A DNA stretch of 64,000 bases, taken from positions 186,001 to 250,000 of the IMG/VR virus record IMGVR_UViG_3300047510_001118; one strand, written 5' to 3'. Below, in pieces: positions 7,785-51,100 of this stretch. Position numbers and translations under genes: made by a program. The notes under the pieces were generated by a model. The model was given only the letters and a program-made list of their open reading frames with translations, was not told where the DNA came from and searched no databases. Numbering within the stretch: the stretch's first letter is position 1; each line of letters begins with the position of its first letter.

Positions 7785-7818
7785 TTCTAAATTTCCTTTT
7801 AATTCTCAGCTCTATTAC

Positions 7819-18268: not shown

Positions 18269-18961
18269 TTACTGACTTTCAATTGATACTGTGTCAGATG
18301 TTGCTGAACCAAATGTCCATTTAACCTTAGTACCGGTAGCAAAATCGCCACTGCCAGAAACTTTTCTTTCTAACACTGCTACACGTGATGTTAGTTTTCT
18401 AACAAAGTATGCGTTAGTATTAGCATCAACTGCTGTAATTGACATTTCGTTTTCGCCTAGTGCTGCAGACTGTACTAATTTACATACTGCTGTACCGTCA
18501 CTAGTTCGAACTCTATAACGCTTACTGCCAACTTGTCTAAGTACGTCGCCTGTAGTAAGTTCTGAACCAGAACCAATTTGTGCTTCACACTTAAGAGCAT
18601 TTATGCGAGAAGCAGTAGTTAATGCGACTGTTACGCCACCTGAACCGCTAGTTAAGTTCAATGTTTCGTTGTTATCACTATCTACTACACTGATAGTTGG
18701 TACGGCTGTATAGCCACTACCAGCATCAGTAATATTAATTCCTGTTAAGTCACCGTTACCATCAATAACTGCTGTACCTGTTGCAGTTTGACCACCAGTA
18801 ATTTGTGGTGCGCTGAATGTTACAGTTGTTGTAAGTGCTGCCAAACTGGCTGCTATTGGTGCGGCAATAGTTACACTTGCTAACTTCTCGCCACCAACGC
18901 CTTCGCCGTCGGCGTTATAGTTTGTATTGCCAAAATATTTCTTATGAATAGGACGTCCCAT
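18269..18961 (-). CDS. Putative virion (possibly head-associated) protein, 230 aa
   Basis: ORF track; strong AAGGAG RBS; immediately downstream of the major capsid gene with its own late box; G/T/S/A-rich, contains ITDAGSGYT..PTISV. Confidence 0.75.
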   Translation of the reverse strand: MGRPIHKKYFGNTNYNADGEGVGGEKLASVTIAAPIAASLAALTTTVTFSAPQITGGQTATGTAVIDGNGDLTGINITDAGSGYTAVPTISVVDSDNNETLNLTSGSGGVTVALTTASRINALKCEAQIGSGSELTTGDVLRQVGSKRYRVRTSDGTAVCKLVQSAALGENEMSITAVDANTNAYFVRKLTSRVAVLERKVSGSGDFATGTKVKWTFGSATSDTVSIESQ

Positions 18962-19040
18962 TTGTTTTTCTCCTTAGTTACGAGCGTTCTAGGCTCTACG
19001 CGGTTGGTTCCGCATAAATCTGAAACCGTTTCAGACATAG
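18962..19040 (-). promoter_or_regulatory. Structured 5' leader with three hairpins
   Basis: TCTGAAA/TTTCAGA (19019-19035), TATGCGG/CCGCGTA (18997-19016), GAGC/GCTC (18982-18996), between the TAAATA box and the RBS. Confidence 0.5.
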
Positions 19041-27349: not shown

Positions 27350-28207
27350 ATGGAAAATCAAGCAGTAAACCCGTTGAAAAAATATTTTCGACAACCAAAA
27401 TTATATTTAAAATTACCTAGTTCTGGATCGTTTTATCCAGAGGGAACCTTAGAAAAAACAGACAATGGAGAATATCCAGTATTTCCAATGACTGCCAAAG
27501 ATGAAATTACTATCAAGACTCCTGATGCGTTAATGAATGGACAGGCCACTGTTGATGTTATAGAAAGTTGTATTCCCAATATTAAAAATGCTTGGGCAGT
27601 TCCATCTATTGACATTGATGCTATACTGATAGCAATTCGTATTGCCACCTATGGCGAAACTATTGAATTAGACGTAACACTGCCAAACACTACTATTATT
27701 AAAACATTTACAGCAGATTTAAGATTAGTTGTAGACAAACTAATGAACGCAGTTTTTGATACTGAAATAAAAATTAGTGACGATTTAACTGCGTTTATAC
27801 GTCCTTTAACTTATAAAGAATACACTCAGAATTCAATTAAAACTTTAGAAGAACAGAGATTATTTTCAATAGTTAATAATGATCAACTTTCAGAAGAAGA
27901 AAAACAAAAGAATTTTTCAGTAAGTTTTAAAAAAATTACAGATATCACAGTGAACACAGTTGCTCAGAGTATCACTAAAATAGTTACACCTGACGGTGTA
28001 GTAACTGATCCACAGTTTATCAAAGAATTTTTAGAAAATTCAGACAAAGATTTTTTTAATAAGTTTATTGTAGCACTAGCAGATCAAAAAGAAAAATTTA
28101 TTATGCCGCCTTTTAAAGTTCAAACCTCTGAGGAAGAACAAAAAGAAGGAGCACCAGCAGAGTTTGAAGCACCTGTAGTCCTGGACGCATCAAATTTTTT
28201 CGGGTAA
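27350..28207 (+). CDS. gp26: Baseplate hub/tail assembly chaperone (T4 gp26-like)
   Basis: NPL..YFRQP..Y..LPS.G, PMTAKDE..K.PDAL.NG, ID.DAILIAIR.A.YG motifs; ends NFFG. Confidence 0.8.
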   Translation: MENQAVNPLKKYFRQPKLYLKLPSSGSFYPEGTLEKTDNGEYPVFPMTAKDEITIKTPDALMNGQATVDVIESCIPNIKNAWAVPSIDIDAILIAIRIATYGETIELDVTLPNTTIIKTFTADLRLVVDKLMNAVFDTEIKISDDLTAFIRPLTYKEYTQNSIKTLEEQRLFSIVNNDQLSEEEKQKNFSVSFKKITDITVNTVAQSITKIVTPDGVVTDPQFIKEFLENSDKDFFNKFIVALADQKEKFIMPPFKVQTSEEEQKEGAPAEFEAPVVLDASNFFG

Positions 28208-28257
28208 AGCTCTTTAATCTGCCGCTCGATGAAGCCATGCGGGTGATTAAGGGGCTT
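28195..28257 (+). promoter_or_regulatory. Predicted -1 programmed ribosomal frameshift signal
   Basis: T_TTT_TTC heptamer (28195-28201), 5 nt spacer, 13 bp stem 28207-28219/28245-28257 with an inner hairpin; the -1 frame is open into the 28237-28431 ORF. Confidence 0.75.
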
Positions 28258-28431
28258 GAAAGTGAAATCAAGTCGTTGAAGTTAGAATTATTAAAACTCT
28301 GTTGGTATATGAGAGGTGGTATTTCATTAGAAGAATGTTACAATCTATCATATGATGATCGAGCATTAATTGTAGACATTGTTAAAGAGAACATGGAAAC
28401 TACTAAGAAATCAGGATTACCTTTCTTCTAA
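28237..28431 (+). CDS. gp51-like assembly protein, probably expressed as a -1 frameshift extension of the gp26-like ORF (about 360 aa fusion)
   Basis: WYMRGGIS.EE.YNLS..DR..I motif; no recognisable RBS before ATG 28237; frame is open back to the slippery site. Confidence 0.7.
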   Translation: MRVIKGLESEIKSLKLELLKLCWYMRGGISLEECYNLSYDDRALIVDIVKENMETTKKSGLPFF

Positions 28432-28891
28432 CCTATATAGATGAACTACGTTCATCTGTTCTTCGCTTTCGCTCGAACTATTTCTTCTTTTCTTAACTAT
28501 TGAACTATTATTAAGTGCGAAGCACTTTAGTATTATCCAGATTGTTCAGGTCACACTTAGCCCTAGCGGGCTAAGAAAATGAACATTATCCGAGTTGCAC
28601 AATGTCACACAGCGTTATGGCATTACAGAGGCGGTCGTCCGGTACCTCGAGCCACGTCTTATCACGACGGCAGGCATATAAATGTACGCTATCACACTTA
28701 TATCCGTTAGGGAATTACCCTTCATTTAGCCTTTTTAAATTCTTTTCAAACAGCAAAACCAGTTGTATATAGGCATATCTGATCTTCGTCCTGTCAAGGA
28801 TAGTTGCTGAGTACTCTTAACGGCAAGAGAGTTTCCGTCCCTGCGACTCGTAGTCCAGGTATTAGGGCGCACGACATTGGCCTGCGCGAGC
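28432..28891 (-). ncRNA. Candidate large structured ncRNA (about 400-460 nt)
   Basis: Longest non-coding gap in the window, more GC-rich than its flanks, with at least 12 helices readable by eye including nested multibranch domains; starts right after the GIY-YIG stop codon. Confidence 0.7.
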
Positions 28892-29338
28892 TTATTGACC
28901 GTTTAATTTTGCCTGAGCTTGTTCTTGTAGGCGTTGTCGAAGTATGTTTGAACCACCCACTCTAACGTTGATAATGCCGTTATAGTATTCGTCAGATTCT
29001 AAAACTCTGCGTTCAAACTGTTCTCTTGCCTCTAAATATGACAGTTCTGCCTTGCTTTTACAGTAGTAAAGTATTTCTCTTGTGAAGTTTTCTGGACCTA
29101 ATGATTGAACATCTGCGTTTAACCTATCAGATGAGCCCCAGTATTCGCGCCAATCGCTTTCTACTGTGCTACGTCTTTTAAGTTTTTTGCCTTTGAGTGG
29201 TGGTTTAGTACGTTTGAATTGAGCTAATTTCTTGCCTATGTACTTTTGTCCAGTTTTGAGGTTAGTAATGAGATACACAAAGCCAATATGACCTTCTGGT
29301 ATTTCTTCAACTAAAGCATTTTGATAGTGCCATGACAT
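28892..29338 (-). CDS. Stand-alone GIY-YIG family endonuclease, 148 aa (catalytic domain only)
   Basis: GFVYLITNLKTGQKYIGKK motif plus downstream conserved E (YLEAREQ) and N (YYNGII); no C-terminal DNA-binding repeats. Confidence 0.8.
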   Translation of the reverse strand: MSWHYQNALVEEIPEGHIGFVYLITNLKTGQKYIGKKLAQFKRTKPPLKGKKLKRRSTVESDWREYWGSSDRLNADVQSLGPENFTREILYYCKSKAELSYLEAREQFERRVLESDEYYNGIINVRVGGSNILRQRLQEQAQAKLNGQ

Positions 29339-29353
29339 GCTCGTATATACCGA

Positions 29354-29584
29354 TCAGTCACTGTCCTCATCCTTGGTTTTGGTTTTGCCTATAAGTTCTT
29401 TACGTTTTGACAGTATTTCTATGCGCCTTTTAGTAGCCATCTCTCGCACTGTTCTCAGTGCTTCTCTGGCTTCTACACTTGATCCAATGTAACCATATCG
29501 TTCAAAGCGATCATTCCATCTACAGTAGGCAATAATCGCTTTGATCAACTCTTCATGTGTGTCGTTATCGAACTCTTCACTCAT
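29354..29584 (-). CDS. Small helical protein, 76 aa, basic C-terminus (weak Hc1 histone-like pattern)
   Basis: ORF track; start overlaps the gp46 stop; S.EAR.AL..V..MA..RR.EI pattern. Confidence 0.65.
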   Translation of the reverse strand: MSEEFDNDTHEELIKAIIAYCRWNDRFERYGYIGSSVEAREALRTVREMATKRRIEILSKRKELIGKTKTKDEDSD

Positions 29585-31361
29585 AAATTTCTACATCATT
29601 GGCATAACTGGTGAACCCGTTTTCTTTTACTACCTTGAGCACGTTGTTCACGCGACCCACTAATTCATCCCTATGAGAAATTAGATAGATATTCTTATGT
29701 CGTTCACGGCCCATCTTTTTCAAGATACCTAGAGAGTTTTCAACTCCGTTGGCGTCCATGCCCGAATCAATAAGTTCATCTATGAATAAGAGATTGATGT
29801 TCTGGTATAACGACTCCCAAACATCACGGAACGCCCACGACAATCCTAAGATTAAGCGATTCCTTTCTCCTCGACTCAAGTTATCAAAGTCTAAATCTTG
29901 ACCGAGTTGGGTTATTTCTACCGTTAGGTCATTTTGGAATACAACGGTGTGAGGTAGACCCACCTTATCAAGGTAGTAAGTGAGACGATTGTTTAGATAA
30001 GCAAGATTTTGGTCAATGATCTTCTTACGAATAAACGAATCTTTGTTTGTTAAAAGTTTAAGAAGAAACTCTTGATGATCTTTTACAAGAGTTAAACTGT
30101 TTATAGAATCCCACGATACATCCTGTAACGCAGTATTTTCTAACTCTGTGATCTGTTCTTGATACATATCAGTTTCTTCTTGTTTGGATTTTAGTTGGTT
30201 AGCAAGACTTTCCAAATTACTTCTGTGATTGTATGCTTCATTAAGTGTGTCGTAGAACGTCTGTGGCCGACCGTTGATGTCTCCAATCTGTTCTAATTCT
30301 TTAATAATTAAAGTTAAATCGCCTGTGACCTTGGATTTGTATGTATCCGCATCTAGAAGATTTTTTTCTGCCGCTTTAATCATTTCGTCATGTTTGTGAT
30401 CATGTAGTTCTTGTTCACAAGCCGGACATGTTTTCTTGTCTAATTGTGTTATTTCTTTAGAATATTTCTGTACAGACTTATCAGCCTGCATAACTGCTGT
30501 TTCAAGAGTGGCTTTTTCTTTGTTAAGACTCTTAATTAATGCGGCTTGTTCGTTATAGACTTTGAGTTTTTCGTGTTGAGATATCTCGTTTTCAATGTCA
30601 ACTTTTGAAAGTTCATCAATGGCCTTTTCTATTTTTGCTATTTCTGCTTCACGATTCTTTTGCCAAGCACTTTGTTTTAATTTTAAACTGTTAATACTTT
30701 CTTGTATACGTTCATTTGACTTTTTAACCGCATCAATCCGTATAGTCTCTTGCGTAATTTCGTCTTTGGTAATACGTACTTGTTCTTTTAACAGTTCTGC
30801 TTTCTCACTGAGTAGGGTTATTCCTAACAACTGTTCAATAATTACTCGTTGATCACCCGACTTCATAGATAAAAACGGTTCAGTATAGGTGTTAAGAGCA
30901 ATGATATGCTTAAACATATCGTGACTCATACCAATAAGCTCGTCAATATCTTTCTGTGTTTCTCTGCTGTCGCCTTGCCCTTCGTCATCTACGTCAGCAT
31001 TTTCCTGTTCTTGATCATCAACATAGAACTTTAATACGTTAGGCTTACGTCCACGCTCAATTCTATACAATCGTCCATTCTTTTCAAACTCTACACAGAC
31101 TAACATATTTTTACCGTTAATCTTGTTTACAAGATTATCTTTTTTAATGTTAGTTAGAGCCTGTCCAAATAAAGCATAACTTAGTGCGTTTACAATAGTG
31201 GTCTTACCCGTGCCGTTTCGAGAGCCGGAATCGTCACCTCCTTGGTCCAAGTTCTCGCCTAATACGAGGGTAAGTTGTTCTTGATTAAAATTTATAGCCT
31301 GAGTAGCATTACCCACGCTCATAAAATTTTTAACAGTTAAATCTTTTATTTTTATTATCAT
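29577..31361 (-). CDS. gp46: Recombination endonuclease ATPase subunit (T4 gp46/SbcC/Rad50-like)
   Basis: KNFMSVGN start, Walker A GSRNGTGKTT, coiled coil with CPAC zinc hook, signature LSRGE, Walker B LLFIDE. Confidence 0.95.
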   Translation of the reverse strand: MIIKIKDLTVKNFMSVGNATQAINFNQEQLTLVLGENLDQGGDDSGSRNGTGKTTIVNALSYALFGQALTNIKKDNLVNKINGKNMLVCVEFEKNGRLYRIERGRKPNVLKFYVDDQEQENADVDDEGQGDSRETQKDIDELIGMSHDMFKHIIALNTYTEPFLSMKSGDQRVIIEQLLGITLLSEKAELLKEQVRITKDEITQETIRIDAVKKSNERIQESINSLKLKQSAWQKNREAEIAKIEKAIDELSKVDIENEISQHEKLKVYNEQAALIKSLNKEKATLETAVMQADKSVQKYSKEITQLDKKTCPACEQELHDHKHDEMIKAAEKNLLDADTYKSKVTGDLTLIIKELEQIGDINGRPQTFYDTLNEAYNHRSNLESLANQLKSKQEETDMYQEQITELENTALQDVSWDSINSLTLVKDHQEFLLKLLTNKDSFIRKKIIDQNLAYLNNRLTYYLDKVGLPHTVVFQNDLTVEITQLGQDLDFDNLSRGERNRLILGLSWAFRDVWESLYQNINLLFIDELIDSGMDANGVENSLGILKKMGRERHKNIYLISHRDELVGRVNNVLKVVKENGFTSYANDVEIYE

Positions 31362-32362
31362 AGATTATTATAAATTGCCAATAATACTTTGGGATCATAG
31401 TTATCGCTTTGTATACTTGCGATTTGATTGCTGACAATTTGGTCAATACTTTCAAATTGTTCTACATTTAGATCTGTGTTAATCTCTATTTCTTTTTTCT
31501 CTGGAATAAGTGTTAACTCTCTAAGATTATTTTGTTTTACAAATGTTTCTTTGATAAAACTTGCCTCTTCAAAACTAATTGGAAGGTCAATACCTACTCT
31601 AAGATATGTTTTAGGTAGAATAAGTTTTTCACTGTTGTCTAATAATTCACTGAGTTTAAGTGTTTTAAATTTAGGAGCATCGTTCCATATCTTATATACC
31701 GGAGATTTTCCATGCTCTAAGATCATCATACCACGGTCATCGTCCCAGGCATCAGCATAATTGTGCGGAAATGCGTTGCCAATATACACAATATTCTGTT
31801 TAGCCTGACGCTTATGGAAGTGTCCTGAAAACACATATTCGGGATTCTTAAAATGATCTGCCTGTAACTCGCCATGATCTGGCATCTGTACCATAGCATT
31901 CATCATAAACAAGGGAAGTTCAAAGTGACCAAACACATAGCGGCTCTTTAATTTTTCCATTTTACGCCATTCGTCACCAACTAACCACGGGACTAGAGTA
32001 ACGTCGTCGATAGTTAGTATGTCACTGACAATGGTGACTCCGGGAATATGGCGTCCCCAGTCTACAGAGTGTACATCGCGTTTATCTTTGTAATATAAAT
32101 CGTGATTACCGGGAAAGAAAAAGAATTGGTCAAAGGCTTTGCCTAATTTTTCTAGGCTTCGAATGCTACTAACCATAGTTAACATATTAAGGCTGTTGCG
32201 ATTATGATGCCAATCGCCTAGAAAAATTCCAGTATCACAGCCTTCTTTTTTAGCCTCAGCAATAAACCAATCTACGAAATCTTCGCAGTCTTGATTATGT
32301 GCTGCCGAATTTGATTTTAATCCAAAGTGTATGTCTGTAAAACACGCAACCTTTTTAAACAT
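31358..32362 (-). CDS. gp47: Recombination endonuclease nuclease subunit (T4 gp47/SbcD/Mre11-like); start likely ATG 32362
   Basis: Metallophosphoesterase motifs DIHFG, GDWHH, GNHD, GHFE, GHFH; AGGA RBS before the second Met. Confidence 0.95.
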   Translation of the reverse strand: MFKKVACFTDIHFGLKSNSAAHNQDCEDFVDWFIAEAKKEGCDTGIFLGDWHHNRNSLNMLTMVSSIRSLEKLGKAFDQFFFFPGNHDLYYKDKRDVHSVDWGRHIPGVTIVSDILTIDDVTLVPWLVGDEWRKMEKLKSRYVFGHFELPLFMMNAMVQMPDHGELQADHFKNPEYVFSGHFHKRQAKQNIVYIGNAFPHNYADAWDDDRGMMILEHGKSPVYKIWNDAPKFKTLKLSELLDNSEKLILPKTYLRVGIDLPISFEEASFIKETFVKQNNLRELTLIPEKKEIEINTDLNVEQFESIDQIVSNQIASIQSDNYDPKVLLAIYNNL

Positions 32363-32386
32363 TAACAATTCCTATAGTTTTGGTAT

Positions 32387-32419: not shown

Positions 32420-33244
32420 TTATTCGCTCGAATCTGCTTCTCTCTTCATGGCAGCATCGTATTCTGCGTTGATCATTCGGGTATAACTAGGACTCATACC
32501 GTTCATTTCTAAAATATCATCACGTATATTCTGCATTTTCTTTTCAATATTGATGACTCGAACAAACGAATTAGTAACAGCCGCAGTAAAATAGGCAAAT
32601 GGATTGTCCGATTTCGATTCATCAAACTGTAGACCAATCTGCGTTAACTGTAGAATAGCCTGGCCTTTCATTTCTTCATTATAAGTATAACCACGAACGT
32701 TGCCACGGGTGGCATATCTTTCACAGAGCTTGATATACATACGAGCTAAGGTATCTGTGATCTGTCCGTGATCCTTGCTGAACTTGCCTTTGAGCATGCC
32801 GCCTCGCCAATGGCTTTTTCCTACACAAACTAGTTGATCGTTTTCGTCAAACATCCAGTGTTGAAATGGAGGAAAATTAACTTTTTCTCTGTGATCTGCC
32901 GCACTTTTTGGTGTACGTTTACGTCCGGGCTCTAGCGGAACATGGTCGTAGGTCATAATACGAAAAACTAAATCGCTTTTTTCTATTTTTTTATAATCTA
33001 CTTCAAACTCGGCTAGTTTAACTTTTATATTTTCTGCTTTGGCTTTTTCAAATGCTTCTTGTCCTAGACGTTTTGCTCTTGCTCGTTTAGCATCAGCGAC
33101 AGTTCTAATATTAATCTTGTCTACGCTGGGCAATATAATATCATATTGATGATATTCAGGCTTAACAAAACTACAGTAAGTGTTTTTACTTTTGTGTATT
33201 TCTGATAACAAATCTTTGTTATTTAGGTAGTTAACTTTTTTCAT
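32420..33244 (-). CDS. gp55: Late transcription sigma factor (T4 gp55-like) with a large insertion
   Basis: YLNNKDLL N-terminus; region-2-like R.N.RGYTY.EEM...A, FDESKS.NPFAYFT....NSF.R.I..EKK; precedes gp47/gp46 as in T4. Confidence 0.85.
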   Translation of the reverse strand: MKKVNYLNNKDLLSEIHKSKNTYCSFVKPEYHQYDIILPSVDKINIRTVADAKRARAKRLGQEAFEKAKAENIKVKLAEFEVDYKKIEKSDLVFRIMTYDHVPLEPGRKRTPKSAADHREKVNFPPFQHWMFDENDQLVCVGKSHWRGGMLKGKFSKDHGQITDTLARMYIKLCERYATRGNVRGYTYNEEMKGQAILQLTQIGLQFDESKSDNPFAYFTAAVTNSFVRVINIEKKMQNIRDDILEMNGMSPSYTRMINAEYDAAMKREADSSE

Positions 33245-42176: not shown

Positions 42177-45100
42177 ATGGCATTTACTAAAGATCAAAAA
42201 GAACCAAAACTACCAATAGGTCAAGACAGCACTCGAAGTGCTTCAGATTTTTTACCTAGATATTTTAGAACAAATACTAATCGTAAAATATTAAACGGAA
42301 CACTTGATCAGTTAATATCTGTTGGTAATGTAGATAAAATTAATGCTTACATCGGTAGAAAATCTACCAAGGCGTATACGCCTACTGACAATTACTTAGA
42401 AGAAATATCTTTAGATCGTCAGTCATACCAACTTGAGCCTGCGATCTTAGTCAAAGACAAATTAGATAATGTAACATTTTTTAAAGATTACAACGATTAT
42501 ATTAATCAGTTACTATATTTTAATACTTTTGATATTGACCACGAGCTAACTAATAGCCAAGAATTTTACAGTTGGAATCCGCACATTGATTGGGACAAAT
42601 TTGTAAACTATCGTGAATATTATTGGCTACCAATGGGACCGCAGTCAATCGCAGTTAAAGGTCAGTCTAAAGACATTGTTAGCACATACTCGATTTCTTT
42701 AGTAGAAGATTCTGATAATTTTGCTTATATTTTTACTCCTGACGGACTGACACGTAATCCTACACTAAAACTTTACAGAGGTCAAACATATAATTTTGAC
42801 ATTGACTGTGAAGGACAGCCTTTAACTTTTTCTACTAATCGTTCTCAAGATATTACATTTGTCTATAAGGACGGTGTGACTAAAGATTCTGAATATGTTG
42901 AAAAAGGAACAATTACATTTAAAGTTCCTGACAATGCGCCTGATATTATCTATTATGTTAGTAAAAATAATATCAACACATCAGGATTTTTTAAAATATA
43001 TGACATTGAAGAAAATACAGCCATCGATGTTGAAAAAGAAATATTAGGTAAAAAAACTTACTTAATCGACGGAATAACTCCGCTGTCAAGTGGAATGAAA
43101 ATTAATTTTATTGGTAATGTTACCCCTGAAAAATACAGTACTGGATTTTGGTATGTAGAAGGCGTGGGAAATGCTATTAGATTAGTTGATTCAGTTACTC
43201 TTGAAAATCCTGGAGGATATACATTCAGTGAAGACATTGACTTTGATAGTGAAAAATTTGATACACAAGGATTTGACAGCAACAATAACTATCCTTCTAA
43301 CAAAGATTATATCACTATTAATAGATCAAGCCGAGATAGAAACCCGTGGTCAAGATATAATAGATGGTTCCACAAATCTGTTATCGAAACATCGGCAGCA
43401 TATAATAATCAACCTATAGATCTTGACCAAGAAGCAAGGGCTAAAAGACCTATTGTTGAATTTGATAGAGATATCCAACTTTGGAATTTTGGAGTAGAAG
43501 CAAAAAATTCAATAGACTTAATTGATTTATATACTAAAGATGTTTTTAGCACGGTAGAAGGATCATTTGGATTTAAAGTTGATGGTGTTTCGTTAGTCGA
43601 AGGCATGCGTGTATTGTTTGCCGCAGACACTGATAAAACAGTCAATGGTAGAATTTTTAAAGTAACATTTGTTACGCACCTAGGACAAAAAAGAATTTCT
43701 CTAATTGATGTTGATGATACAAATCCTATCGAAGGAGAAAGTGTATTAGTACTACAGGGAGATTTTTTAAAAGGAAAAACATTCCATTATTCGTCTGGTG
43801 TATGGAATTTAAGTCAAGAAAAGACTGGTCTTAATCAGCCACCGTTATTTGATACTGTTGATGTATCTGGAAATAGTTTTGGAGATCGATCTGTTTATAT
43901 CGGTTCTACTTTCCAAGGAACTAAAATTTTTAGTTATGCTGTAGGAGACGTACTAGATCCAGTGTTAGGCTTTAACATTGATTATCGCAATATTGGCAAC
44001 ATCGGAGATATTGTTTTTGATTTTAATTTACAAAAAGATCAGTTTACCTATCAAGGTGAAGTTGAATTAATTACAAAAAAATTAGATAGAGGTTATCTAA
44101 AGAAAAATATTTCTATTTCAACTTTTAATTTAATAAACGGTTGGGTTAAGGCAGAATTTAATTCTAAGCAACCAGTTATTCGTCAATACGACACAACAAC
44201 TCAAAACAATTTATTTGAAATTGATGTTTATAAAAATAGTGCCACACTAGACGATCTTGAAGTGTCAGTGTTTGTTGATGATATCAAACAGCCTTCTACT
44301 TCCTATGAAGTATATAGACAAAATAGCATAGCCTACATTCAATTTAACAGCGACTTAGACACGAACAGATCTGTAGTATTAGAAACACGGTCAGCGGCAA
44401 AGAAATTAAAAGATGTTGGTTATTATAAGTTTCCAAGCAATCTTGAAAGTAATCCTCAAAATTTAAGTCTTGACGATTTAACACTGGGAGAAATCACAAA
44501 TCATTTAAAAACTATTGTTGATAATTCTCCAAGTTTTTCAGGACAAATGCCAGGAATTAGTAATCTACGAGATATCGGAGATCAAACTGGATACGGTAGT
44601 CAAATAATTCAACACTCTGCTCCGTTGGCACCAATTATCTATTCTTTTACTAACAAAAATGTTAATATAATTAAGTCTCTAAGATATGCCAATGATGAAT
44701 ACTCAAAGTTTAAAAGAAACTTTATTAGAACTGCTACAACATTAGGATATGATGGGGAAACTCGAGATCATGTTGATTTAATTTTTAAAGAATTAAGAAA
44801 AAATTCTACTACATCATCACCATTCTATCTCAGCGACATGGTACCGTTTGGTGTAAACTTTATCTACGAACAAGAAATCATCGACGATAGTTTTACTGAT
44901 TATCCGTTGACATTTGATTTTAATTTAGAAACATTAAGTCGTAAATCAGTTTTAGTTTACTTAAACGACACATTATTATTATATGGTAGAGATTACATCT
45001 TTACAAATGACAGTTTTGTTAGATTGTTAGCCCCAATCACTACAGGTGACAATTTAAAGGTAGCACAATATGAAAACAGCCTTGGCTGCTGTGTTCCACC

Positions 45101-48100
45101 GACGCCTACTAAGTTAGGATTATATCCAAAATTTGAACCTAAAATTTTTATTGATAACACATATCAAACACCAACGTTGGTAATTCAAGGGCACGATGGC
45201 AGTATCACAGTAGCCTTTAATGATTATAGAGATAATCTAATATTAGAATTAGAATATAGAATTTATAATAATATTAAGAAAGAATATGATCCTTCATTGT
45301 TTGACATTAATAATTTCATTGAAGGCCACCATAGAAAAACTAACCTTTCAACTAATGAATTAAATCTTGCTTTAAGACAAGAATTTTTAACTTGGTTAGG
45401 TTTAACTAATAAAGATTATACAAAGCACGATTTCTTTGATAGAAATAATCCTTATACATTTAATTACAAGTCTTATTCAAGCTCTGACGGAACGCCATTA
45501 ATTGGATTCTGGAGAGGAATATACAAATATTTCTATGACACTGACAGACCGCACACACACCCATGGGAGATGTTAGGTTTTTCAAATAAGCCAACTTGGT
45601 GGGACAGTGTATATGGAATTGCGCCTTATACTAAAGATAATTTAATTTTATGGAATGATCTAAGAGATGGAATAATTAGAGAGCCTGGCATACTACCAAA
45701 ACAAAATAAAAAATACGTTAGGGAAGATTTATTAACTTATATTCCTGTTGATGCTGAAGGCAATCTTTTAAATCCTTTAGAAATTGGATTAGTAAGAAAT
45801 TATGTAGCAACGTCTGCTGAAAAAGAATTTACGTTCGGCGACTGGGCGCCTGTTGAAACTGCTTGGAGACGCGGCAGTCAATATCCGTTTGCTTTAATTA
45901 CAGCCTTAACACTGTTAAGACCTGCTCAAATGTTTGCTGTTTGCTTTGATAGAGAGCGTCAATATAGAGACGGAACAGGGCAAATTGTATATAAAATGCC
46001 AGCAGGAAATCTAAGATTTAATACAACTAATTTAGTCTTTCCTAATACAGTAAAAGAATCTGAAAATAGATTTACCAGTGGACTAATCAACTATATGTGC
46101 GATTATGCTATAAGTAAATCTTTTGGATTTTTAGAAGAGTTTAAAACTGAGTTATCAAGTTTACAAATAAAAATTTCTAGCAAGTTGGCAGGATTTACTA
46201 GCAAAGAAAAATTTAAACTTATTCTCGACAGCCGTAGTCCTTTAAATCAAGGAAATGTTTTTATACCGCAAGAGAATTATAATATAATTCTTAATACTAG
46301 CAGTCCTATTTTATCAATATCTTATAGTGGTGTAATTATTGAAAAAACATCTAGCGGTTTTGTAATCAATGGATATAATAAATCAAATCCTGACTTTAGA
46401 TATTTTAAACCATTAGATACAGTTTCAGACCCAACAGTTAATGTGGGCGGTATTTCAGAAACATATCTCGAGTGGACTTCGGGTAAAACATACACTAAAG
46501 GCCAAGTTGTAAGAGTTGATCAAAACTTTTATAGAGTAACGGCTTCTCATGATGGCGGCCCTTCTTTTGAATTAAAATATTTTGCTAAACTACCAGCACT
46601 ACCAATCGTGGGCGGCAGAGAAGTTATTATTAGAAGAAACTTTACCACAGAAGTTTCAACAATACACTACGGGGCCGAATTAAAAACAACACAAGAAGTG
46701 GTTGATTTTGTATTAGGTTACGGTAAATGGTTAGAAAGCCAAGGATTTATTTTTGACAGTTTTAATCCTGTAATTAAAACAGTTACAGACTGGCAAACTA
46801 GTGCCAAAGAGTTTGCCTTCTGGACAACTCAAAATTGGAGTACTGGATCTGTAATTACCCTAAGCCCAGCAGCCGAAGAAGTAACATTTGGAAAATTATA
46901 TGCGGTTGCTGACAGCATCTACGATCCGTTCTATGAATATACAGTGTTCAAACAAGACGGTCAAACATTAGATCCAAATTTTACAAATACTGTAAGAGAG
47001 AATAATTCTTTTAGTATCCGTCCTAAAGATACTGGAGATGGTGTTTATCACATTACATTAAATTTAATTCAAAAAGAACATGTGCTAATATTAGATGATG
47101 TTACGGTGTTTAATGATGTAATATACGATCAAACACAGGGATATAGACAGGATAGGATTAAAGTTGTAGGCTATAAAATATCAGACTGGAACGGCGATTT
47201 TGTTATTCCTGGATTTGTGTATGACAGAGCAGTATTAACTGAATGGAAACCTTGGAGAGATTATGCTCTAGGAGAAACTGTAAAATACAAAGAATTTTAT
47301 TACAGTGCTAGAAAAAATATTCCAGGAACTGAGCTATTCAACGACGACGAGTGGTACAGATTAAACGGTAAACCAGAAAGTAAATTAATTCCTAACTGGG
47401 ACTATCGTGCTACACAGTTTGAAGATTTTTATGATCTAGATACAGATAGTTTCGATGTTGATCAACAAAAGTTTGCTCAACATTTAATTGGTTATCAAAA
47501 GAGACAATATCTTGAAAACATTATCAATGATGATGTAAGCCAGTATAAGTTTTATCAGGGCATGATTCAAGAAAAAGGAACAAAGAATAGCCTTTCAAAA
47601 TTATTTGACGTATTAAGTTCTACAGATGCCGACAGCCTTGAATTTTATGAAGAGTGGGCAATTAGATTAGGTCAGTACGGAGCCAGCGAAGGATTTGAAG
47701 AAGTTGAGTATCTATTAGACGAGTCTCAATTTTTAATAAATCCACAGCCTATTGAATTAGTTGATTCAGTACCTCCGGGCGTGAATGATTTTGTCTACAG
47801 AATTACTAGAGATAAAGTTTATCTAAAACCAGACACATACGATCACAAACCTATTCCTACAGTTAGGTCTAAGAAAGAATATATTCCTACTGCTGGCTAT
47901 GTACATTTAGAAGATATAAAATATATTATAACTTCTAAAGATCAAATTGGTGACTATAATATCAATGATCTAAAAGAGGGCGATTATTTTTGGTTAGGAT
48001 TTGATAAAACATCTTGGAATGTTTACAGATTTACTCTAGTTGTTTCTTCAGTAAGATCCTTCCAAGAATTATCTAATCTAAGAATTAATTTTAATTCAGC

Positions 48101-51100
48101 AAGTAGTTTATTTTCTGTAAATGATTTTATCGGAATTAACAATACAAATTCATCTGTTGAAGGAATAAAACAAGTTTTAGCAGTCGGCCCAGGATATATT
48201 GAAATTGAACTTCCTCAAGATCTTGATACTGAAGCCATTGCGGCACTTAATAACAATCTACAAGTAAACTTATTTGCTTTTACGTCGCAGAGATTAGCAA
48301 CTACAAGTTCTAAAATTTCAACAATAGACGACTTAAATGATTTACCTGTTCCTAGAAAAAAGAACGGAGAACTTGTTTGGATTGACGGTGCTAATAATGA
48401 CTGGAGTGTGTGGAAGTTTGACAAGTCATATTCTCGATCAGTGATATCTAACACTGCTGATTATTTTGGTAGAACATTAGCAGTAAGCGAAGACGATTCT
48501 ATTTTTGCTGTTAGCAGTCTAACAACTCTAGTTGATAGCAATGGGGATCCTAGAGTAGACGATAACGGAGATATATTAAAGTCTGATGTCTTATCTTTTT
48601 ATACAAGATCTACTGAAAAGTTTTCATGGCTCCTAAAGGGAGAAATATCAAAATTAACAACAATTATTCAGAACGAAAGTTTTCAAAATACAAACTATAG
48701 TTTTGGAGAATCGTTAGCCCTTAGCGCCGCCGGCGACTATCTATTAGTTGGAGCACCAGCATACGGAATAGTTGAGATTCCTCAACCACCGTTGCCACCG
48801 ATTGAAATAGTTAAAAATTGGGGTTATGTTGCCAAGTATAATAAAAACAGATTTAATAATTTTGAATTTGACAGAGTTATTTTAAGTCCAGTACAAACAG
48901 ATAATGAGTTCTTTGGTCATAAGATAGCAATATCTGGTAACGTTGCGTTTATTGCCGGTAAAGGCAGTGACACGGCGCCTGCGTCTTTGACAGCATACAA
49001 TCTAGCATCTAATACAACGACCGTAAGAATTACTTTCTCTAATGTAGAAATTATTGATTTAACAACAGGTTCTGATAATACTGTGGTAATTTCTAAATCA
49101 GACTCAACTGTAGCAGTATACAAACTAGTAGGAAATTCTTTAACATTAATACAAAATATATCATCAAGTGTTGTTCCAGGTACGCTAATTGACGACAAGT
49201 TTGGCCAATCTGTATCAATTTCTAAAGATAATTCTATGATTGCTGTGGGAATTCCATACTACAGTGAAGTGAATTCTAATCAGGGCACAGTGGCAATTTT
49301 AATTAAATCTGGTTCAACTTATCAGTACAGTTATCGTGTCAACAGCCCATTAAAACAAGAATCGGAAAGATTTGGTTACAGAGTTAGATTTAATCCTACT
49401 GGAAATAGATTGGTAGTTTACAGTTACGGTGGCGACCAAACCATTGACACAACGATTGATCAAGGTACAACTACGTTTGACCTAGACGCAATGAAATTTG
49501 TAGAGCGCAGTGAAAATGTTGGAAGTGTGCGTGTCTATGAAAAATACGGAAACAAGTTTATATTCGATGACGAACTTGAGCCTCAAGAAGTCATAGGAAT
49601 TAATTACGGCGACAATTTAGTAGTGGGTAGAAACAACATATATGTCAATGACTACACAGCCGTAGAAGGACGTTTCTATGAATTTGTAGGACGATCAACT
49701 TCGTGGACAAAATATAGAAGTCCAGATCCTATTGTTGACCTAACAAAGATAAAATCTATCTTCTTATACGATACTGTTAAAAATAATATTATTCAAAATT
49801 TAGATTTCATCGATCCAATCAACGGAAAAGTTTTAGGTGTTGCTGAACAAGAACTAAGTTTTAAAACTTATTACGATCCGGCTGTATATTCAACAGGTAC
49901 TGATGCTGTAGTTGTCGATAGTTTAATGCCATGGAAACAACAGCAAGTTGGAAAGTTATGGTGGGATTTAAGTACAATTAAATTTGTTAATCCTAATCAA
50001 GGTAGTGTTGTCTATAAAGCAAATACATGGAATAATGTATTTGCTGAAGCAGAGGTTGATATCTACGAATGGGTTGAGTCAGAATATTCACCAGAAGAGT
50101 GGGATAGTCTAGCAGACACTGAAGCCGGCCTTACACTAGGAATCAGCGGAGTATCAAAATATGGTGCTCAGGTATACAGCGTTAGTCAAACTTATGACAA
50201 CGTAAGCAAAACATTTAAAAACATTTATTATTTCTGGGTTAAAAATAAATCAATAGTTCCTGATGTAACCTTCCGTAAAGTTTCAGCCAGAGAAGTCTCA
50301 GAATTAATTTCTAATCCTAAATCTAAAGGCATTAGATATGTTACTTTATTAGGAAATAATCAATTAGCGTTAGTTAACTGTAAAGAATTAATCACTGACA
50401 AAGATGTTGCTTTAAATATTCGCTATTGGATTATTGACAAAACAGATCAAAATATACACAGTCATTATCAATTATTAGCCGAAGGCAACGTTGACAAAAA
50501 ACTTAACAAGTATGTTGAACAAAAATGGTTTGATAGTTTAATTGGATATGATAACCAGGGTAGAGAAATTCCTGATCCAAGTTTGCCACCGAAGTTAAAA
50601 TATGGTATTTTAAGCAAACCTAGACAGTCAATGTTTGTTAATAGATTAGAGGCATTAAAACAGGTTATCGAAAGAGTTAATTCTGTATTAGTAAACAATT
50701 TATTAATTGATGATTTTGATTTTGATATTTTAAATTCTAAAGAAGAACCTCCGTCAGAATTTTCAAGAGAATATGACATAGCAATTGACACTCAAAGTCA
50801 AATTAGATTTGTTGGATCTACCGGCTTTGACCAAGCCACTGCTAGTTTAGTAATCAAAGAAGGCAAAATTGAACGAGTAATAGTAACTAGTGCGGGTAGA
50901 GGATACAAGATTCCTCCTTCTGTAAAAGTTATTTCTAATACCGGCTCAGGAGCAAGATTATCAACAGTTATCAACTCTTCAGGAGAGGTTACTGCTATTA
51001 ATATTGACAATGCTGGTAGAAATTATCAAACATCGACCTTTGTAGAAATTAGACCGTTTACTGTATTAGTTACTACTGACGAAACTGCGGCTAGTAAGTG

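What the first reader, a model, noticed from the sequence alone, without database searches (positions are those of the whole stretch)
28432..28891. Unrecognised ~450 nt multi-domain structured RNA immediately 3' of a GIY-YIG gene
Seen in sequence: this is the largest non-coding gap in an otherwise packed window, and it is more GC-rich than the other intergenic regions. On the minus strand, directly after the nuclease stop, it reads as ordered domains. These are GCGCA/TGCGC; CCTG-GACT-acg-AGTC-g-CAGG; ACTCT/AGAGT; and a CAGCAA/TTGCTG-closed junction holding TCCT-tgac-AGGA and GATCAG/CTGGTT. Next come a long GGATATAAGTGT/ACATTTATATGCC hairpin whose loop (ATAGCGT) can pair with ACGCTGT about 70-80 nt downstream (pseudoknot), CGTC/GACG, and nested GTGGC-GAGG-CGG-acga-CCG-CCTC-GCCAT. 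Last is CGGA..GTTCA/TGAAC..TCTG enclosing CTTAGCCC-gcta-GGGCTAAG. Established: phages carry large ornate ncRNAs (GOLLD, ROOL), and some nuclease genes have dedicated partner RNAs (HEARO/omega RNAs). I do not see RNase P, tmRNA, group I or group II core motifs. Inference: a functional phage ncRNA, possibly of an uncatalogued class.
Basis: partly seen in the sequence, partly recalled or inferred. Interest (0 to 1): 0.85.

Follow-up and report, generated by a model that had tools for sequence, protein, structure and literature searches.

The report
Large pseudoknotted phage RNA, 5' third known
The gap holds a real, roughly 465-base folded RNA conserved in hundreds of uncultured freshwater T4-like phages. 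Its first third is the already catalogued Polynucleobacter-1 motif, the other two thirds are undescribed, and its function is unknown.

Summary
Window 28433-28898 (minus strand) is a conserved non-coding block. It was found full-length in 141 viral or metagenome loci, 60-83% identical to the window, and always in the order gp47, gp46, (orf76), nuclease, RNA, baseplate hub.

Covariation is strong. On 86 sequences 98.1% of cells are paired against 77.5% in shuffles, and 25 of 32 pairs change on both sides. Two pseudoknots are supported.

The RNA is not wholly uncatalogued. Positions 28748-28892 match Rfam RF01718 (Polynucleobacter-1) at 105 bits. A 2010 paper already placed that motif downstream of this gene family. 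The 3' ~315 nt have no Rfam match and appear undescribed. They hold the two pseudoknots, a GNRA hairpin and a terminator.

Two reader helices near the 3' end are refuted. That region instead holds a tandem direct repeat whose 7-mer is identical in both copies in 101 of 103 sequences, across nine concordant variants. I could not explain this.

The "dedicated nuclease partner" reading is weakened. Two loci have a PD-(D/E)XK nuclease in the same slot, several have an extra ORF wedged in (Seg-like in at least two), and relatives of the GIY-YIG protein in three cultured phages I inspected have no such RNA.

Best reading: an independent structured phage RNA whose 5' flank is a nuclease-gene slot.

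The parts
28433..28898 (-). Whole conserved structured RNA, about 465 nt. It runs from the conserved C-R-G-U-(U)-A-A lead-in to the terminator hairpin.
   Evidence: Conserved at 60-83% in 141 full-length copies, with a sharp drop in conservation at about 28425. One copy in the window by nhmmer, E 1.9e-122. The 5' lead-in is shared whatever ORF lies upstream.
28892..29338 (-). 148-aa GIY-YIG nuclease gene (SegE-type catalytic domain only). Its stop codon lies in the RNA's 5' lead-in.
   Evidence: Pfam PF19835, E 2e-35; phrog_447. GIY, YIG, Arg, Glu and Asn motifs are conserved. 42% identical to P-SSM2 PSSM2_218.
28748..28892 (-). Domain I, the Rfam Polynucleobacter-1 motif. Helices: P1 28887-28883/28871-28867; P2 28858-28841; P3 28829-28814; P4 28809-28804/28756-28751, enclosing P4a 28799-28790 and P4b 28784-28779/28762-28757.
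   Evidence: RF01718 at 105.2 bits, E 9.7e-22, full model 1-141. P1, P4 and P4b have changes on both sides. P2 and P3 form hairpins of at least 4 bp in 96% and 83% of sequences, and of at least 3 bp in 98-100%. The P4a pairs never vary.
28733..28747 (-). A-rich single-stranded linker between domains I and II.
   Evidence: Read from alignment A1. No helix was found there.
28708..28722 (-). P5 hairpin, AGGG/CCCU type.
   Evidence: Forms a hairpin in 83-98% of 103 sequences, with 50 distinct sequences. Compensatory variants such as GGGG/CCCC and GCAGG/CCUGC are visible in A1.
28673..28705 (-). P6, a long hairpin of 11-13 bp with a conserved G-W-U-A-G-C-R-N loop.
   Evidence: All 11 pairs change on both sides and 96.1% of cells are paired. 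98 distinct sequences all fold.
28609..28692 (-). Pseudoknot A: P6 loop 28692-28686 pairs with 28615-28609.
   Evidence: Six of 7 pairs change on both sides and 99.2% of cells are paired (helix 2).
28634..28668 (-). Pseudoknot B: 28668-28664 (GUCGU) pairs with 28638-28634 (ACGAC), which lies in the loop of P9.
   Evidence: Three of 5 pairs change on both sides, for example C-G 45 against U-A 40. 98.6% of cells are paired (helix 3).
28618..28654 (-). P8 (28654-28651/28621-28618) enclosing P9 (28648-28644/28632-28628), whose 11-nt loop is A-C-M-G-G-N-N-N-A-C-C.
   Evidence: helices 4 and 5: 99.4% and 99.3% of cells paired, with 3 and 2 pairs changing on both sides.
28585..28610 (-). Tandem unit 1: GUGUGAC, 5-7 nt, NNA, CUC, then the 7-mer (GGAUAAU in the window).
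   Evidence: The 7-mer is identical to that of unit 2 in 101 of 103 sequences, across nine concordant variants.
28532..28556 (-). Tandem unit 2: GUGUGAC, 5-7 nt, NNA, UCU, then the same 7-mer.
   Evidence: No complement was found inside the RNA, in the flanks or in the window.
28556..28575 (-). H10 hairpin, CUUAGCCC/GGGCUAAG, between the two units.
   Evidence: Forms a hairpin of at least 4 bp in all 103 sequences, with 71 distinct sequences.
28514..28526 (-). H11 hairpin, with the nearly invariant sequence G-C-U-U-C-G-C at its tip.
   Evidence: Changes on both sides in 2 pairs. G-C 31, C-G 17, A-U 16 at one pair.
28479..28513 (-). Variable A/U-rich linker. Some relatives carry an extra hairpin here.
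   Evidence: Alignment A1, columns about 530-580.
28458..28478 (-). H12 hairpin: a stem, an apparent pair of tandem G-A mismatches, a 2-bp stem and a GNRA-type tetraloop (GAAA in the window).
   Evidence: Stem pairs covary, U-A 58 against C-G 40 and U-A 74 against C-G 19. Folds in 98% of sequences. The G-A pairing is read from the sequence, not tested.
28437..28459 (.). Terminal hairpin, an intrinsic terminator that is probably bidirectional in this window.
   Evidence: Five of 7 pairs change on both sides and all cells are canonical. No G-U pair in 103 sequences. Scored as a + strand terminator. A U-run follows it in most relatives.

Best explanation
**What it is**
- A free-standing, stable, compactly folded non-coding RNA gene of a clade of uncultured, mostly freshwater T4-like myophages.
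- It is the full-length form of the orphan Polynucleobacter-1 motif (RF01718). Domain I is that motif. Domains II and III add about 315 nt, with two pseudoknots, a GNRA-capped hairpin and a terminator.

**How it is made (inferred)**
- It is transcribed as the 3' end of the leftward gp55, gp47, gp46, orf76, nuclease operon. No room for a promoter of its own is conserved.
- It ends at an intrinsic terminator.

**Why nucleases sit next to it (inferred)**
- The adjacency is positional, not a guide-RNA partnership.
- The site just 5' of the RNA is a slot in which small mobile nuclease genes sit and replace one another. The occupants seen are two GIY-YIG allele classes, a PD-(D/E)XK nuclease and Seg/I-TevI-like endonucleases.
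- Each borrows the RNA's conserved UAA as its stop codon.
- This is as expected if the highly conserved DNA of the RNA gene is a safe harbour or a homing target for free-standing endonucleases. From my own knowledge, the T4 segB gene in the tRNA gene cluster is a precedent.

**What it does (inferred, weak)**
- It acts in trans as a ribonucleoprotein scaffold or ribozyme-like RNA.
- Its two identical single-stranded elements (NNA-YYY-NNAURAW) would bind two copies, or two sites, of one partner whose specificity differs between phage lineages.
For: **Known family**
- RF01718 match at 105 bits. The same match was found in all 12 other loci tested.
- No other family matched with E below 0.3.

**Conservation and synteny**
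- Full-length copies in 141 loci.
- Synteny is constant across the GIY-sampled and the RNA-sampled loci.

**RNA-level selection**
- 98.1% of cells paired against 77.5% shuffled and 27-54% slid. 25 of 32 pairs change on both sides. The covariation score is 0.614 against 0.208, reached by 0 of 500 shuffles.
- Ten helices covary on 103 sequences.
- All local hairpins are kept in 81-100% of sequences.
- G-U 512 against A-C 36.
- Non-coding.

**Terminator**
-.

**Nuclease slot**
- GIY type A, GIY type B, PD-(D/E)XK, and extra ORFs wedged in, two of them Seg-like.
- GIY type is incongruent with gp46 identity. For example L223 and L301 have gp46 at 86-89% but GIY at about 60%, while L209 and L264 have gp46 at 61% but GIY at 84-86%.
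- RNA identity hardly depends on nuclease type: 0.68-0.71 within types against 0.64-0.69 between.
- The GIY family sits at other genome positions, with no such RNA beside it, in the three cultured phages inspected.
- The stop codon of every kind of upstream ORF lies in the conserved GUUAA lead-in.

**Twin elements**
-.
Against: - No locus lacks a nuclease gene just upstream: 0 of 168. A purely selfish endonuclease should be sporadic, so a functional tie between a nuclease and the RNA is not excluded.
- The 148-aa GIY-YIG protein has only a catalytic domain and no recognisable DNA-binding domain. That is unusual for a homing endonuclease and leaves open how it finds a target.
- No transcript data exist, so co-transcription, processing and stability are inferred.
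- No partner for the twin elements was found inside the RNA, in the 3-kb flanks or in the 64-kb window.
- The biological function is unknown.
Confidence: 0.55

Rival explanations
1. Partner RNA of the adjacent nuclease. The RNA binds the small nuclease encoded just upstream and guides, scaffolds, activates or restrains it. The twin 7-13-nt elements would act as guide-like specifiers.
For: - A nuclease gene is upstream in 168 of 168 loci.
- The ORF and the RNA abut, or overlap by up to 219 nt.
- The GIY-YIG protein is a catalytic domain only, with a Lys/Arg-rich loop and no DNA-binding domain.
- Replacement by an unrelated PD-(D/E)XK nuclease in the same slot could be non-orthologous displacement of an effector.
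- The twin elements vary between lineages as specifiers would.
Against: - One RNA serving two unrelated nuclease folds is unlikely.
- Full-length Seg-like endonucleases can sit between the GIY gene and the RNA.
- The same GIY family is found in 750 cultured-phage records, no GenBank phage DNA matches the RNA, and the three loci inspected lack it.
- RNA sequence does not sort by nuclease type.
- The 7-mer variants are shared between GIY types A and B.
- The twin elements show only about ten variants, far fewer than true guides would.
- No target was found.
- No protein column tracks the variants.
Confidence: 0.17
2. Cis-acting 3' untranslated element. The structure stabilises, terminates or feedback-regulates the upstream nuclease mRNA, for example to keep a toxic nuclease low. 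It would have no role of its own in trans.
For: - It begins at the stop codon of whatever ORF lies upstream and ends in a terminator.
- No promoter of its own is conserved.
- Weinberg et al. 2010 rated the motif as possibly cis-regulatory.
Against: - 465 nt with two pseudoknots, a GNRA hairpin and more than 15 conserved helices is far more than any known bacterial 3' UTR element needs.
- The RNA is kept unchanged when the upstream gene is swapped or when another gene is inserted.
- In L054 and L074 the 3' domain persists behind a different 5' module and a 92-aa ORF.
Confidence: 0.13
3. DNA-level element, such as an endonuclease recognition region, a replication origin with iteron-like repeats, or a recombination site. 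On this reading the RNA fold would be incidental.
For: - The twin direct repeats change identically, as iterons or operator sites do.
- L019 has lost exactly one repeat unit.
- The terminal hairpin has no G-U pairs.
Against: - G-U pairs outnumber A-C 512 to 36 in covarying helices, and the pseudoknots covary. That fits selection on one RNA strand only.
- Fixed differences, CUC against UCU, sit between the co-varying parts of the repeats, which argues against gene conversion.
Confidence: 0.04
4. A diverged member of a known catalytic or housekeeping RNA class: group I or II intron remnant, tmRNA, RNase P RNA, or a ribosome-bypass (hop-like) cassette.
For: - Nuclease genes commonly live in self-splicing introns.
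- Related marine phages encode tmRNA.
- The twin elements read as sense codon plus UAA or UGA, 50 nt apart. From my own knowledge this recalls the matched GGA codons of the T4 gene 60 bypass cassette, which travels with the mobA endonuclease.
Against: - No Rfam match to any intron, tmRNA or RNase P model, even at E up to 10.
- ARAGORN finds no tmRNA.
- No flanking exons: the downstream gene is convergent here and has its own start elsewhere.
- No conserved reading frame leads into the twin elements, because the indels are not multiples of three.
- Both elements are followed by a stop codon.
Confidence: 0.04

Closest known systems
Polynucleobacter-1 RNA motif (Rfam RF01718; Weinberg et al. 2010, PMC2864571)
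   Same: Window 28748-28892 matches the whole 141-nt model at 105 bits. The helices are the same. The position is the same, downstream of the GOS11034 / PSSM2_218 gene family. The freshwater setting is the same.
   Different: The published motif is only the 5' third. Here it continues for about 315 conserved nt, with two pseudoknots, twin repeats, a GNRA hairpin and a terminator. The 2010 paper found no copy in a sequenced purified phage and did not call the upstream gene a nuclease. Here the carrier is clearly a T4-like phage and the gene is a GIY-YIG nuclease.
cow-rumen-2 RNA motif (Rfam RF02947)
   Same: Domain II shows the same order of short motifs. These are a hairpin with a UAGC loop, then GCCGCC, then a hairpin with an ACMGGAYGACC loop, then GUAA (alignment). 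True cow-rumen-2 RNAs are also phage-borne, and some very large rumen phage contigs carry two or three copies.
   Different: The match is sub-threshold, 18.4 bits against a gathering score of 66, with E 0.95. It was not found in 12 other loci. nhmmer finds no similarity. The annotated pairings differ. I treat it as a lead, not as membership.
Free-standing homing endonucleases of T4-like phages (seg and mob genes)
   Same: These are small nuclease genes inserted between conserved genes and transcribed with their neighbours. They are swapped between related phages and sit beside highly conserved DNA. Here several nuclease types occupy one slot, their distribution is incongruent with gp46, and Seg-like GIY-YIG plus NUMOD3 genes are wedged in.
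   Different: Occupancy here is universal rather than sporadic. The main occupant lacks a DNA-binding domain. Cleavage of the RNA gene's DNA has not been tested.
Nuclease partner RNAs: HEARO (the omega RNA of IscB) and the TnpB omega RNA
   Same: A structured RNA next to a nuclease gene. As with TnpB, it starts at or inside the 3' end of the ORF.
   Different: There is no Rfam match. The nucleases are GIY-YIG or PD-(D/E)XK, not RuvC-type IscB or TnpB. No transposon ends are present, there is no hypervariable guide, and the RNA is independent of nuclease type.
Large ornate phage-associated RNAs (GOLLD, ROOL)
   Same: Several hundred nucleotides long, multi-domain, with pseudoknots, carried by phages, and of unknown function.
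   Different: No sequence or structure match. It is smaller. It has a fixed syntenic position in T4-like phages and always follows a nuclease gene.

Membership tests
Polynucleobacter-1 RNA (RF01718) | Covariance-model score at or above the Rfam gathering score of 37 bits, over the whole model | tested here: met
   105.2 bits, E 9.7e-22, model positions 1-141 of 141, at 28748-28892 on the minus strand. Scores of 79-115 bits in 12 related loci.
Polynucleobacter-1 RNA (RF01718) | The model's helices are kept with compensatory changes | tested here: met
   P1, P4 and P4b have changes on both sides on 103 sequences. P2 and P3 fold as hairpins of at least 4 bp in 96% and 83% of sequences.
Polynucleobacter-1 RNA (RF01718) | Lies downstream of a GOS11034 / PSSM2_218-family gene, as the describing paper states | tested here: met
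   The upstream 148-aa protein is 42% identical to P-SSM2 PSSM2_218, E 3e-25. Paper text.
cow-rumen-2 RNA (RF02947) | Covariance-model score at or above the gathering score of 66 bits | tested here: not met
   18.4 bits, E 0.95, in the window only. No match in 12 relatives. nhmmer of this RNA against 118 loci, at least 12 of which hold true cow-rumen-2 copies, finds nothing.
HEARO / omega RNA of IscB or TnpB | Match to the RNA model, and an adjacent IscB or TnpB (RuvC-type) nuclease with a variable guide at one end | tested here: not met
   No Rfam match at E up to 10. The neighbours are GIY-YIG or PD-(D/E)XK nucleases. Both RNA ends are conserved and no hypervariable end exists.
Group I or group II intron | Match to the intron core models, and flanking exons of one interrupted gene | tested here: not met
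   No intron family at E up to 10. The downstream neighbour is a convergent gene here, and elsewhere a gene with its own promoter-like motif and start codon.
tmRNA (one-piece or two-piece) | tRNA-like domain and tag reading frame detectable by ARAGORN or Rfam | tested here: not met
   ARAGORN finds no tRNA or tmRNA in the window. No tmRNA family.
Free-standing homing endonuclease cassette (T4 seg/mob type) | Sporadic presence or absence among close relatives | tested here: not met
   Some nuclease is present in 168 of 168 loci. Only the extra ORFs wedged in, two of them Seg-like, are sporadic, at about 5 loci.
Free-standing homing endonuclease cassette (T4 seg/mob type) | Horizontal exchange: nuclease phylogeny incongruent with flanking core genes | tested here: met
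   GIY types A and B are distributed independently of gp46 and gp47 identity. Two loci have a PD-(D/E)XK replacement.
Free-standing homing endonuclease cassette (T4 seg/mob type) | The enzyme cuts the nuclease-free or heterotypic allele near its own insertion site | not testable with these tools
   This needs an in vitro cleavage or co-infection assay.

The most novel reading that the evidence does not exclude
The RNA founds a new class of large phage ribonucleoprotein RNA that is programmable in a limited way. Its two tandem single-stranded elements (NNA-YYY-NNA-URA-W) are always identical to each other, yet they differ between lineages. They would act as twin specifiers that base-pair with two copies of an external nucleic acid.

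Candidate partners are a DNA or RNA target handed to the small nuclease encoded upstream, or two tRNA anticodon loops. The tRNA idea comes from the variable triplets, which are all A-ending, codon-like and followed by UAA or UGA.

If this is right, the 2010 orphan motif is the handle of a guide-like or tRNA-sensing machine.
Probability: 0.1. Interest if true: 0.9.

Novelty: new variant of a known kind. Interest (0 to 1): 0.62.

Why it matters
**What changes for the known motif**
- Polynucleobacter-1 has been an orphan 141-nt motif since 2010, with no known carrier or function.
- This work shows it is only the 5' third of a roughly 465-nt RNA with two pseudoknots.
- That RNA is a syntenic, seemingly universal gene of a large clade of uncultured freshwater T4-like phages.
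- This puts it among the few large, complex-folded RNAs of phages, which as a rule turn out to be ribozymes or ribonucleoprotein cores.

**Two features that give direct handles for experiments**
- A slot at its 5' edge is always filled by one or another small nuclease gene.
- A pair of elements are kept identical to each other while they vary between lineages.
- Such "direct" covariation is not produced by ordinary RNA pairing. It points to an external partner.

**Practical use**
- The full-length alignment would allow a much better Rfam model.

Tried and rejected
- **Known RNA classes.** Rfam at the gathering threshold and at E up to 10, plus ARAGORN. Only RF01718 matched the region. No intron, tmRNA, RNase P, GOLLD, ROOL or HEARO match.
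- **GenBank phages by DNA.** No match to the RNA.
- **Genome contigs pattern scan.** My pattern was too loose. Most of the 120 hits were chance. Only 5 short MAG contigs held the RNA, so I cannot say whether any true bacterial chromosome carries it.
- **Internal partner for the twin 7-mers.** A column-wise complementarity scan gave a best value of 0.82, which was G-U noise. A duplex-energy scan found no consistent site.
- **Partner in the flanks or the window.** Nothing consistent. An 11-nt complementary match at about window 513-523 lies inside a giant ORF, and I judged it chance.
- **Promoter reading of the repeats.** Read from the sequence, the spacing between GUGAC and the 7-mer is 11-12 nt, not 16-18, and some variants lack the final T. 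Rejected.
- **Mini-ORF or ribosome-bypass reading.** No conserved frame leads in, and both copies end in a stop codon. Rejected.
- **cow-rumen-2 homology of domain II.** Motif order is similar by eye, but the match is sub-threshold and not reproducible. Kept only as a lead.
- **Co-variation between the 7-mer variants and residues of GIY, orf76, orf64, hub or gp46.** Only a diffuse phylogenetic signal.
- **Genes downstream of the RNA in other loci.** Of ten ORFs, nine had no PHROG match and one had a weak Hsp70-like match.
- **PDB sequence search with the GIY protein.** No hit.
- **A three-pair helix closing domain I** (28891-28889 with 28731-28729). About 89% canonical with little covariation. 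Left undecided.
Full report
**1. What is in the window**

The window comes from a T4-like myophage. On the minus strand lie four genes in a row:
- a late sigma factor of the gp55 type (32420-33244);
- SbcD-like gp47 (31358-32368);
- SbcC-like gp46 (29577-31361);
- a 76-aa ORF (29354-29584).

They are followed by a 148-aa protein that matches the Pfam SegE-type GIY-YIG domain, PF19835, at E 2e-35 (28892-29338).

On the plus strand a baseplate-hub gene (27350-28207) and a 64-aa ORF (28237-28431) converge on it.

The 460-nt gap between them is the largest ORF-free stretch in the window. Its G+C is 0.44-0.47, against 0.27-0.40 nearby and 0.36 in the next large gap. It has stop codons in all six frames.

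**2. Part of it is already known**

Rfam at the curated threshold places Polynucleobacter-1 (RF01718) at 28748-28892 on the minus strand. The score is 105.2 bits against a gathering score of 37, E 9.7e-22, over the whole model.

That motif was described by Weinberg et al. 2010 (PMC2864571). Their supplement says four things:
- most examples lie downstream of genes of family GOS11034, possibly related to PSSM2_218 of cyanophage P-SSM2;
- the 3' half is not always detected;
- one copy is in Polynucleobacter sp. QLW-P1DMWA-1;
- no copy was seen in a sequenced purified phage.

The GIY-YIG protein here is 42% identical to PSSM2_218, E 3e-25. The pairing "this RNA 3' of this gene" was therefore on record, although the gene was not recognised as a nuclease.

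The rest of the gap, 28432-28747, matches no Rfam family. The best match is cow-rumen-2 at 18.4 bits, E 0.95. ARAGORN finds no tRNA or tmRNA. The only paper in the searchable library that discusses the motif is the 2010 one.

**3. The whole gap is one conserved unit**

I sampled related loci in two ways.
- **By protein.** The GIY-YIG protein has more than 594 relatives in IMG/VR. In the 80 best loci the DNA downstream of the gene aligns to the window from the stop codon to about 28440-28520, at 70-83% identity.
- **By RNA.** Of these, 119 hold the RNA.

Conservation falls abruptly at about 28425. In all I collected 141 full-length copies. Of these, 103 are under 93% identical to one another and 60-83% identical to the window.

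Every locus shows the same order: gp47, gp46, (orf76), nuclease, RNA, a variable stretch of 0-3.4 kb with same-strand genes of unknown function, the 64-aa ORF, then the hub.

The window has one copy. Cultured phages have none. The closest cultured relative of the protein, at 67%, is in the marine Methylophilales phage Melnitz, after nrdB, with no such RNA beside it.

**4. It is a structured RNA on the minus strand**

On an 86-sequence alignment of 28604-28707 (A2) I wrote out five helices and counted pairs.

| Measure | Observed | Shuffled | Slid partners |
|---|---|---|---|
| Cells forming a standard pair | 98.1% | 77.5% | 27-54% |
| Pairs with a change on both sides | 25 of 32 | 20.2 | 11-16 |
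| Covariation score | 0.614 | 0.208 | 0.04-0.12 |

None of 500 shuffles reached any of the observed values.

The five helices are:
- **P6**, the long hairpin. All 11 pairs change on both sides.
- **Pseudoknot A**, the P6 loop 28692-28686 with 28615-28609. Six of 7 pairs change on both sides.
- **Pseudoknot B**, 28668-28664 with 28638-28634 in the loop of P9. Three of 5 pairs change on both sides. This one is new.
- **P8** and **P9**.

A helix search on 103 sequences also supports P1, P4, P4b, the UUC-tipped hairpin H11 and the terminal hairpin. Every local hairpin forms in 81-100% of the sequences, although 50-98 distinct sequences exist for each.

In the supported helices G-U pairs number 512 and A-C pairs 36, so the transcript is the minus strand. 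Gap runs in the alignment are mostly not multiples of three.

In many relatives the GIY ORF runs 12-219 nt into the RNA, because the stop codon is not conserved. Selection there is therefore on the RNA, not on a protein tail.

The terminal hairpin (28456-28440) is followed by a U-run in most relatives. After it comes an AAUAAAUAA motif, which resembles a T4 late promoter by my own knowledge, and then the start of the next gene. The hairpin has no G-U pairs at all. In the window it also scores as a terminator for the converging plus strand.

**5.

Three do not.
- CGG-acga-CCG is replaced by pseudoknot B.
- CGTC/GACG never varies informatively and competes with pseudoknot B.
- The outer helices CGGA/TCTG and GTTCA/TGAAC are contradicted. 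CGGA/TCTG has C-A in 45 of 103 and C-C in 13 of 103 sequences, and GTTCA/TGAAC is only 58-84% canonical.

**6. The unexplained feature**

The region of those two refuted helices is a tandem direct repeat. The layout of each unit is:
- GUGUGAC;
- 5-7 nt;
- NNA;
- CUC in unit 1 (28610-28585), or UCU in unit 2 (28556-28532);
- a 7-mer, GGAUAAU in the window.

The 7-mer is identical in the two units in 101 of 103 sequences. Nine concordant variants occur, among them AGAUAAU (41), GGAUAAU (36), GCAUAAU (11) and GGAUGAA (6). The middle base of the NNA triplet changes in parallel too.

The fixed CUC/UCU difference lies between the co-varying parts, so gene conversion is unlikely.

I found no complementary segment anywhere:
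- not inside the RNA;
- not in the 3-kb flanks;
- not in the 64-kb window.

No residue of the neighbouring proteins tracks the variants. One relative, L019, has lost exactly one unit.

Read as triplets, the element is a sense codon ending in A followed by UAA or UGA. Indels upstream rule out a conserved reading frame. My inference is that the two elements bind the same external partner. This is not shown.

**7. The nuclease association**

Among 168 loci with at least 500 nt upstream of the RNA, all have a nuclease gene there.

| Slot occupant | Loci | Note |
|---|---|---|
| GIY-YIG type A | 88 | 84-93% identical to the window's protein; inflated by the protein-based sampling |
| GIY-YIG type B | 72 | 53-65% identical |
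| PD-(D/E)XK nuclease, 171-173 aa | 2 | PF24608, E about 1e-25; abuts the RNA in place of GIY |
| GIY type B plus an extra ORF of 250-283 aa | about 5 | in L236 and L255 the extra ORF is Seg/I-TevI-like; L236 has GIY-YIG and NUMOD3 hits |

Further points:
- Whatever the upstream ORF, its stop codon sits in a conserved C-R-G-U-(U)-A-A lead-in of the RNA.
- GIY type is distributed independently of gp46 and gp47 identity.
- RNA identity depends only weakly on GIY type, 0.68-0.71 within types against 0.64-0.69 between, in all three domains. The 7-mer variants are shared between the types.
- The GIY protein keeps the catalytic motifs. It has only a catalytic domain and no sequence relative in the PDB.
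- Relatives of it are found in 750 GenBank phage records. In the four I inspected (Melnitz, S-SRM01, phiN3, P-SSM2) it sits at different genome positions.

Taken together, the slot behaves like a landing site for mobile nuclease genes beside a very conserved RNA gene. It does not behave like a fixed nuclease-guide pair. The universal occupancy remains a point in favour of a functional tie.

**8. Modularity**

- L003 lacks most of domain I downstream of P2, together with the linker.
- L019 lacks one tandem unit.
- L016 is a much more diverged version.
- L054 and L074 carry a 92-aa ORF and a different non-coding stretch of about 330 nt in place of domains I and II. They still keep the twin elements (there GCAUAAU), H11, H12 and the terminator.

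The 3' domain is thus the most persistent part, and it is the part absent from Rfam.

**9. Verdict**

This is a real structured phage RNA. Its 5' third is a known orphan motif. The full-length architecture, its phage carrier, the nuclease slot and the twin elements appear to be new. The function is unknown. My best-supported mechanism, its rivals and the tests between them are given in the fields above.

Noticed in passing
window 18959-19035 (-): A second catalogued RNA. The Rfam freshwater-2 motif (RF02980; 65.8 bits against a gathering score of 49.9) sits as a 5' leader, with its ribosome-binding site and AUG, of the gene at 18269-18961. It fits a freshwater origin for the phage.
   Followed up: no
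window 1-7805 (-) and 42177-56123 (+): Two giant genes. One is an open frame of more than 2,600 codons that runs off the start of the window on the minus strand. The other is a 4,648-aa ORF on the plus strand. Neither was annotated here.
   Followed up: partly
L324-L441 (IMG/VR; for example L337, L365 and L397 on one 411-kb contig): True cow-rumen-2 RNAs (RF02947, 90-110 bits) are carried by viral contigs. Some very large contigs, 230-424 kb, carry two or three copies each. The family is typed in Rfam only as an sRNA with no stated carrier.
   Followed up: partly
L054 3729-4055 and L074 (equivalent stretch): A different G+C-rich non-coding module of about 330 nt, with several hairpins and preceded by a 92-aa ORF, replaces domains I and II upstream of the conserved 3' domain. 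It has no Rfam match at E up to 1.
   Followed up: partly
window 27350-28207 (+): The baseplate-hub gene and its surroundings are markedly A+T-rich (G+C 0.27-0.33) compared with the rest of the region. The gene is also poorly conserved, 31-64% identical to the same loci where gp46 is 57-90%.
   Followed up: no
L001 and L002, about 3712-3770: An insertion of about 58 nt, itself a long near-perfect hairpin, sits just after the 3' strand of P9, inside P8, without disturbing the rest of the RNA.
   Followed up: no
Downstream of the RNA in most related loci (for example L005, L029, L033; alignment A1 columns about 665-720): A conserved AAUAAAUAA motif follows the terminator. It resembles a T4 late promoter and lies about 10-25 nt before the ATG of a variable same-strand gene of unknown function. 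The window lacks both the motif and the gene.
   Followed up: partly
GenBank phage records (for example P-SSM2 PSSM2_218, phiN3 gp310): Relatives of this GIY-YIG nuclease are widely annotated as 'NAD synthetase' (phrog_447). That label looks like a propagated misannotation, since the protein matches the SegE-type GIY-YIG domain.
   Followed up: partly
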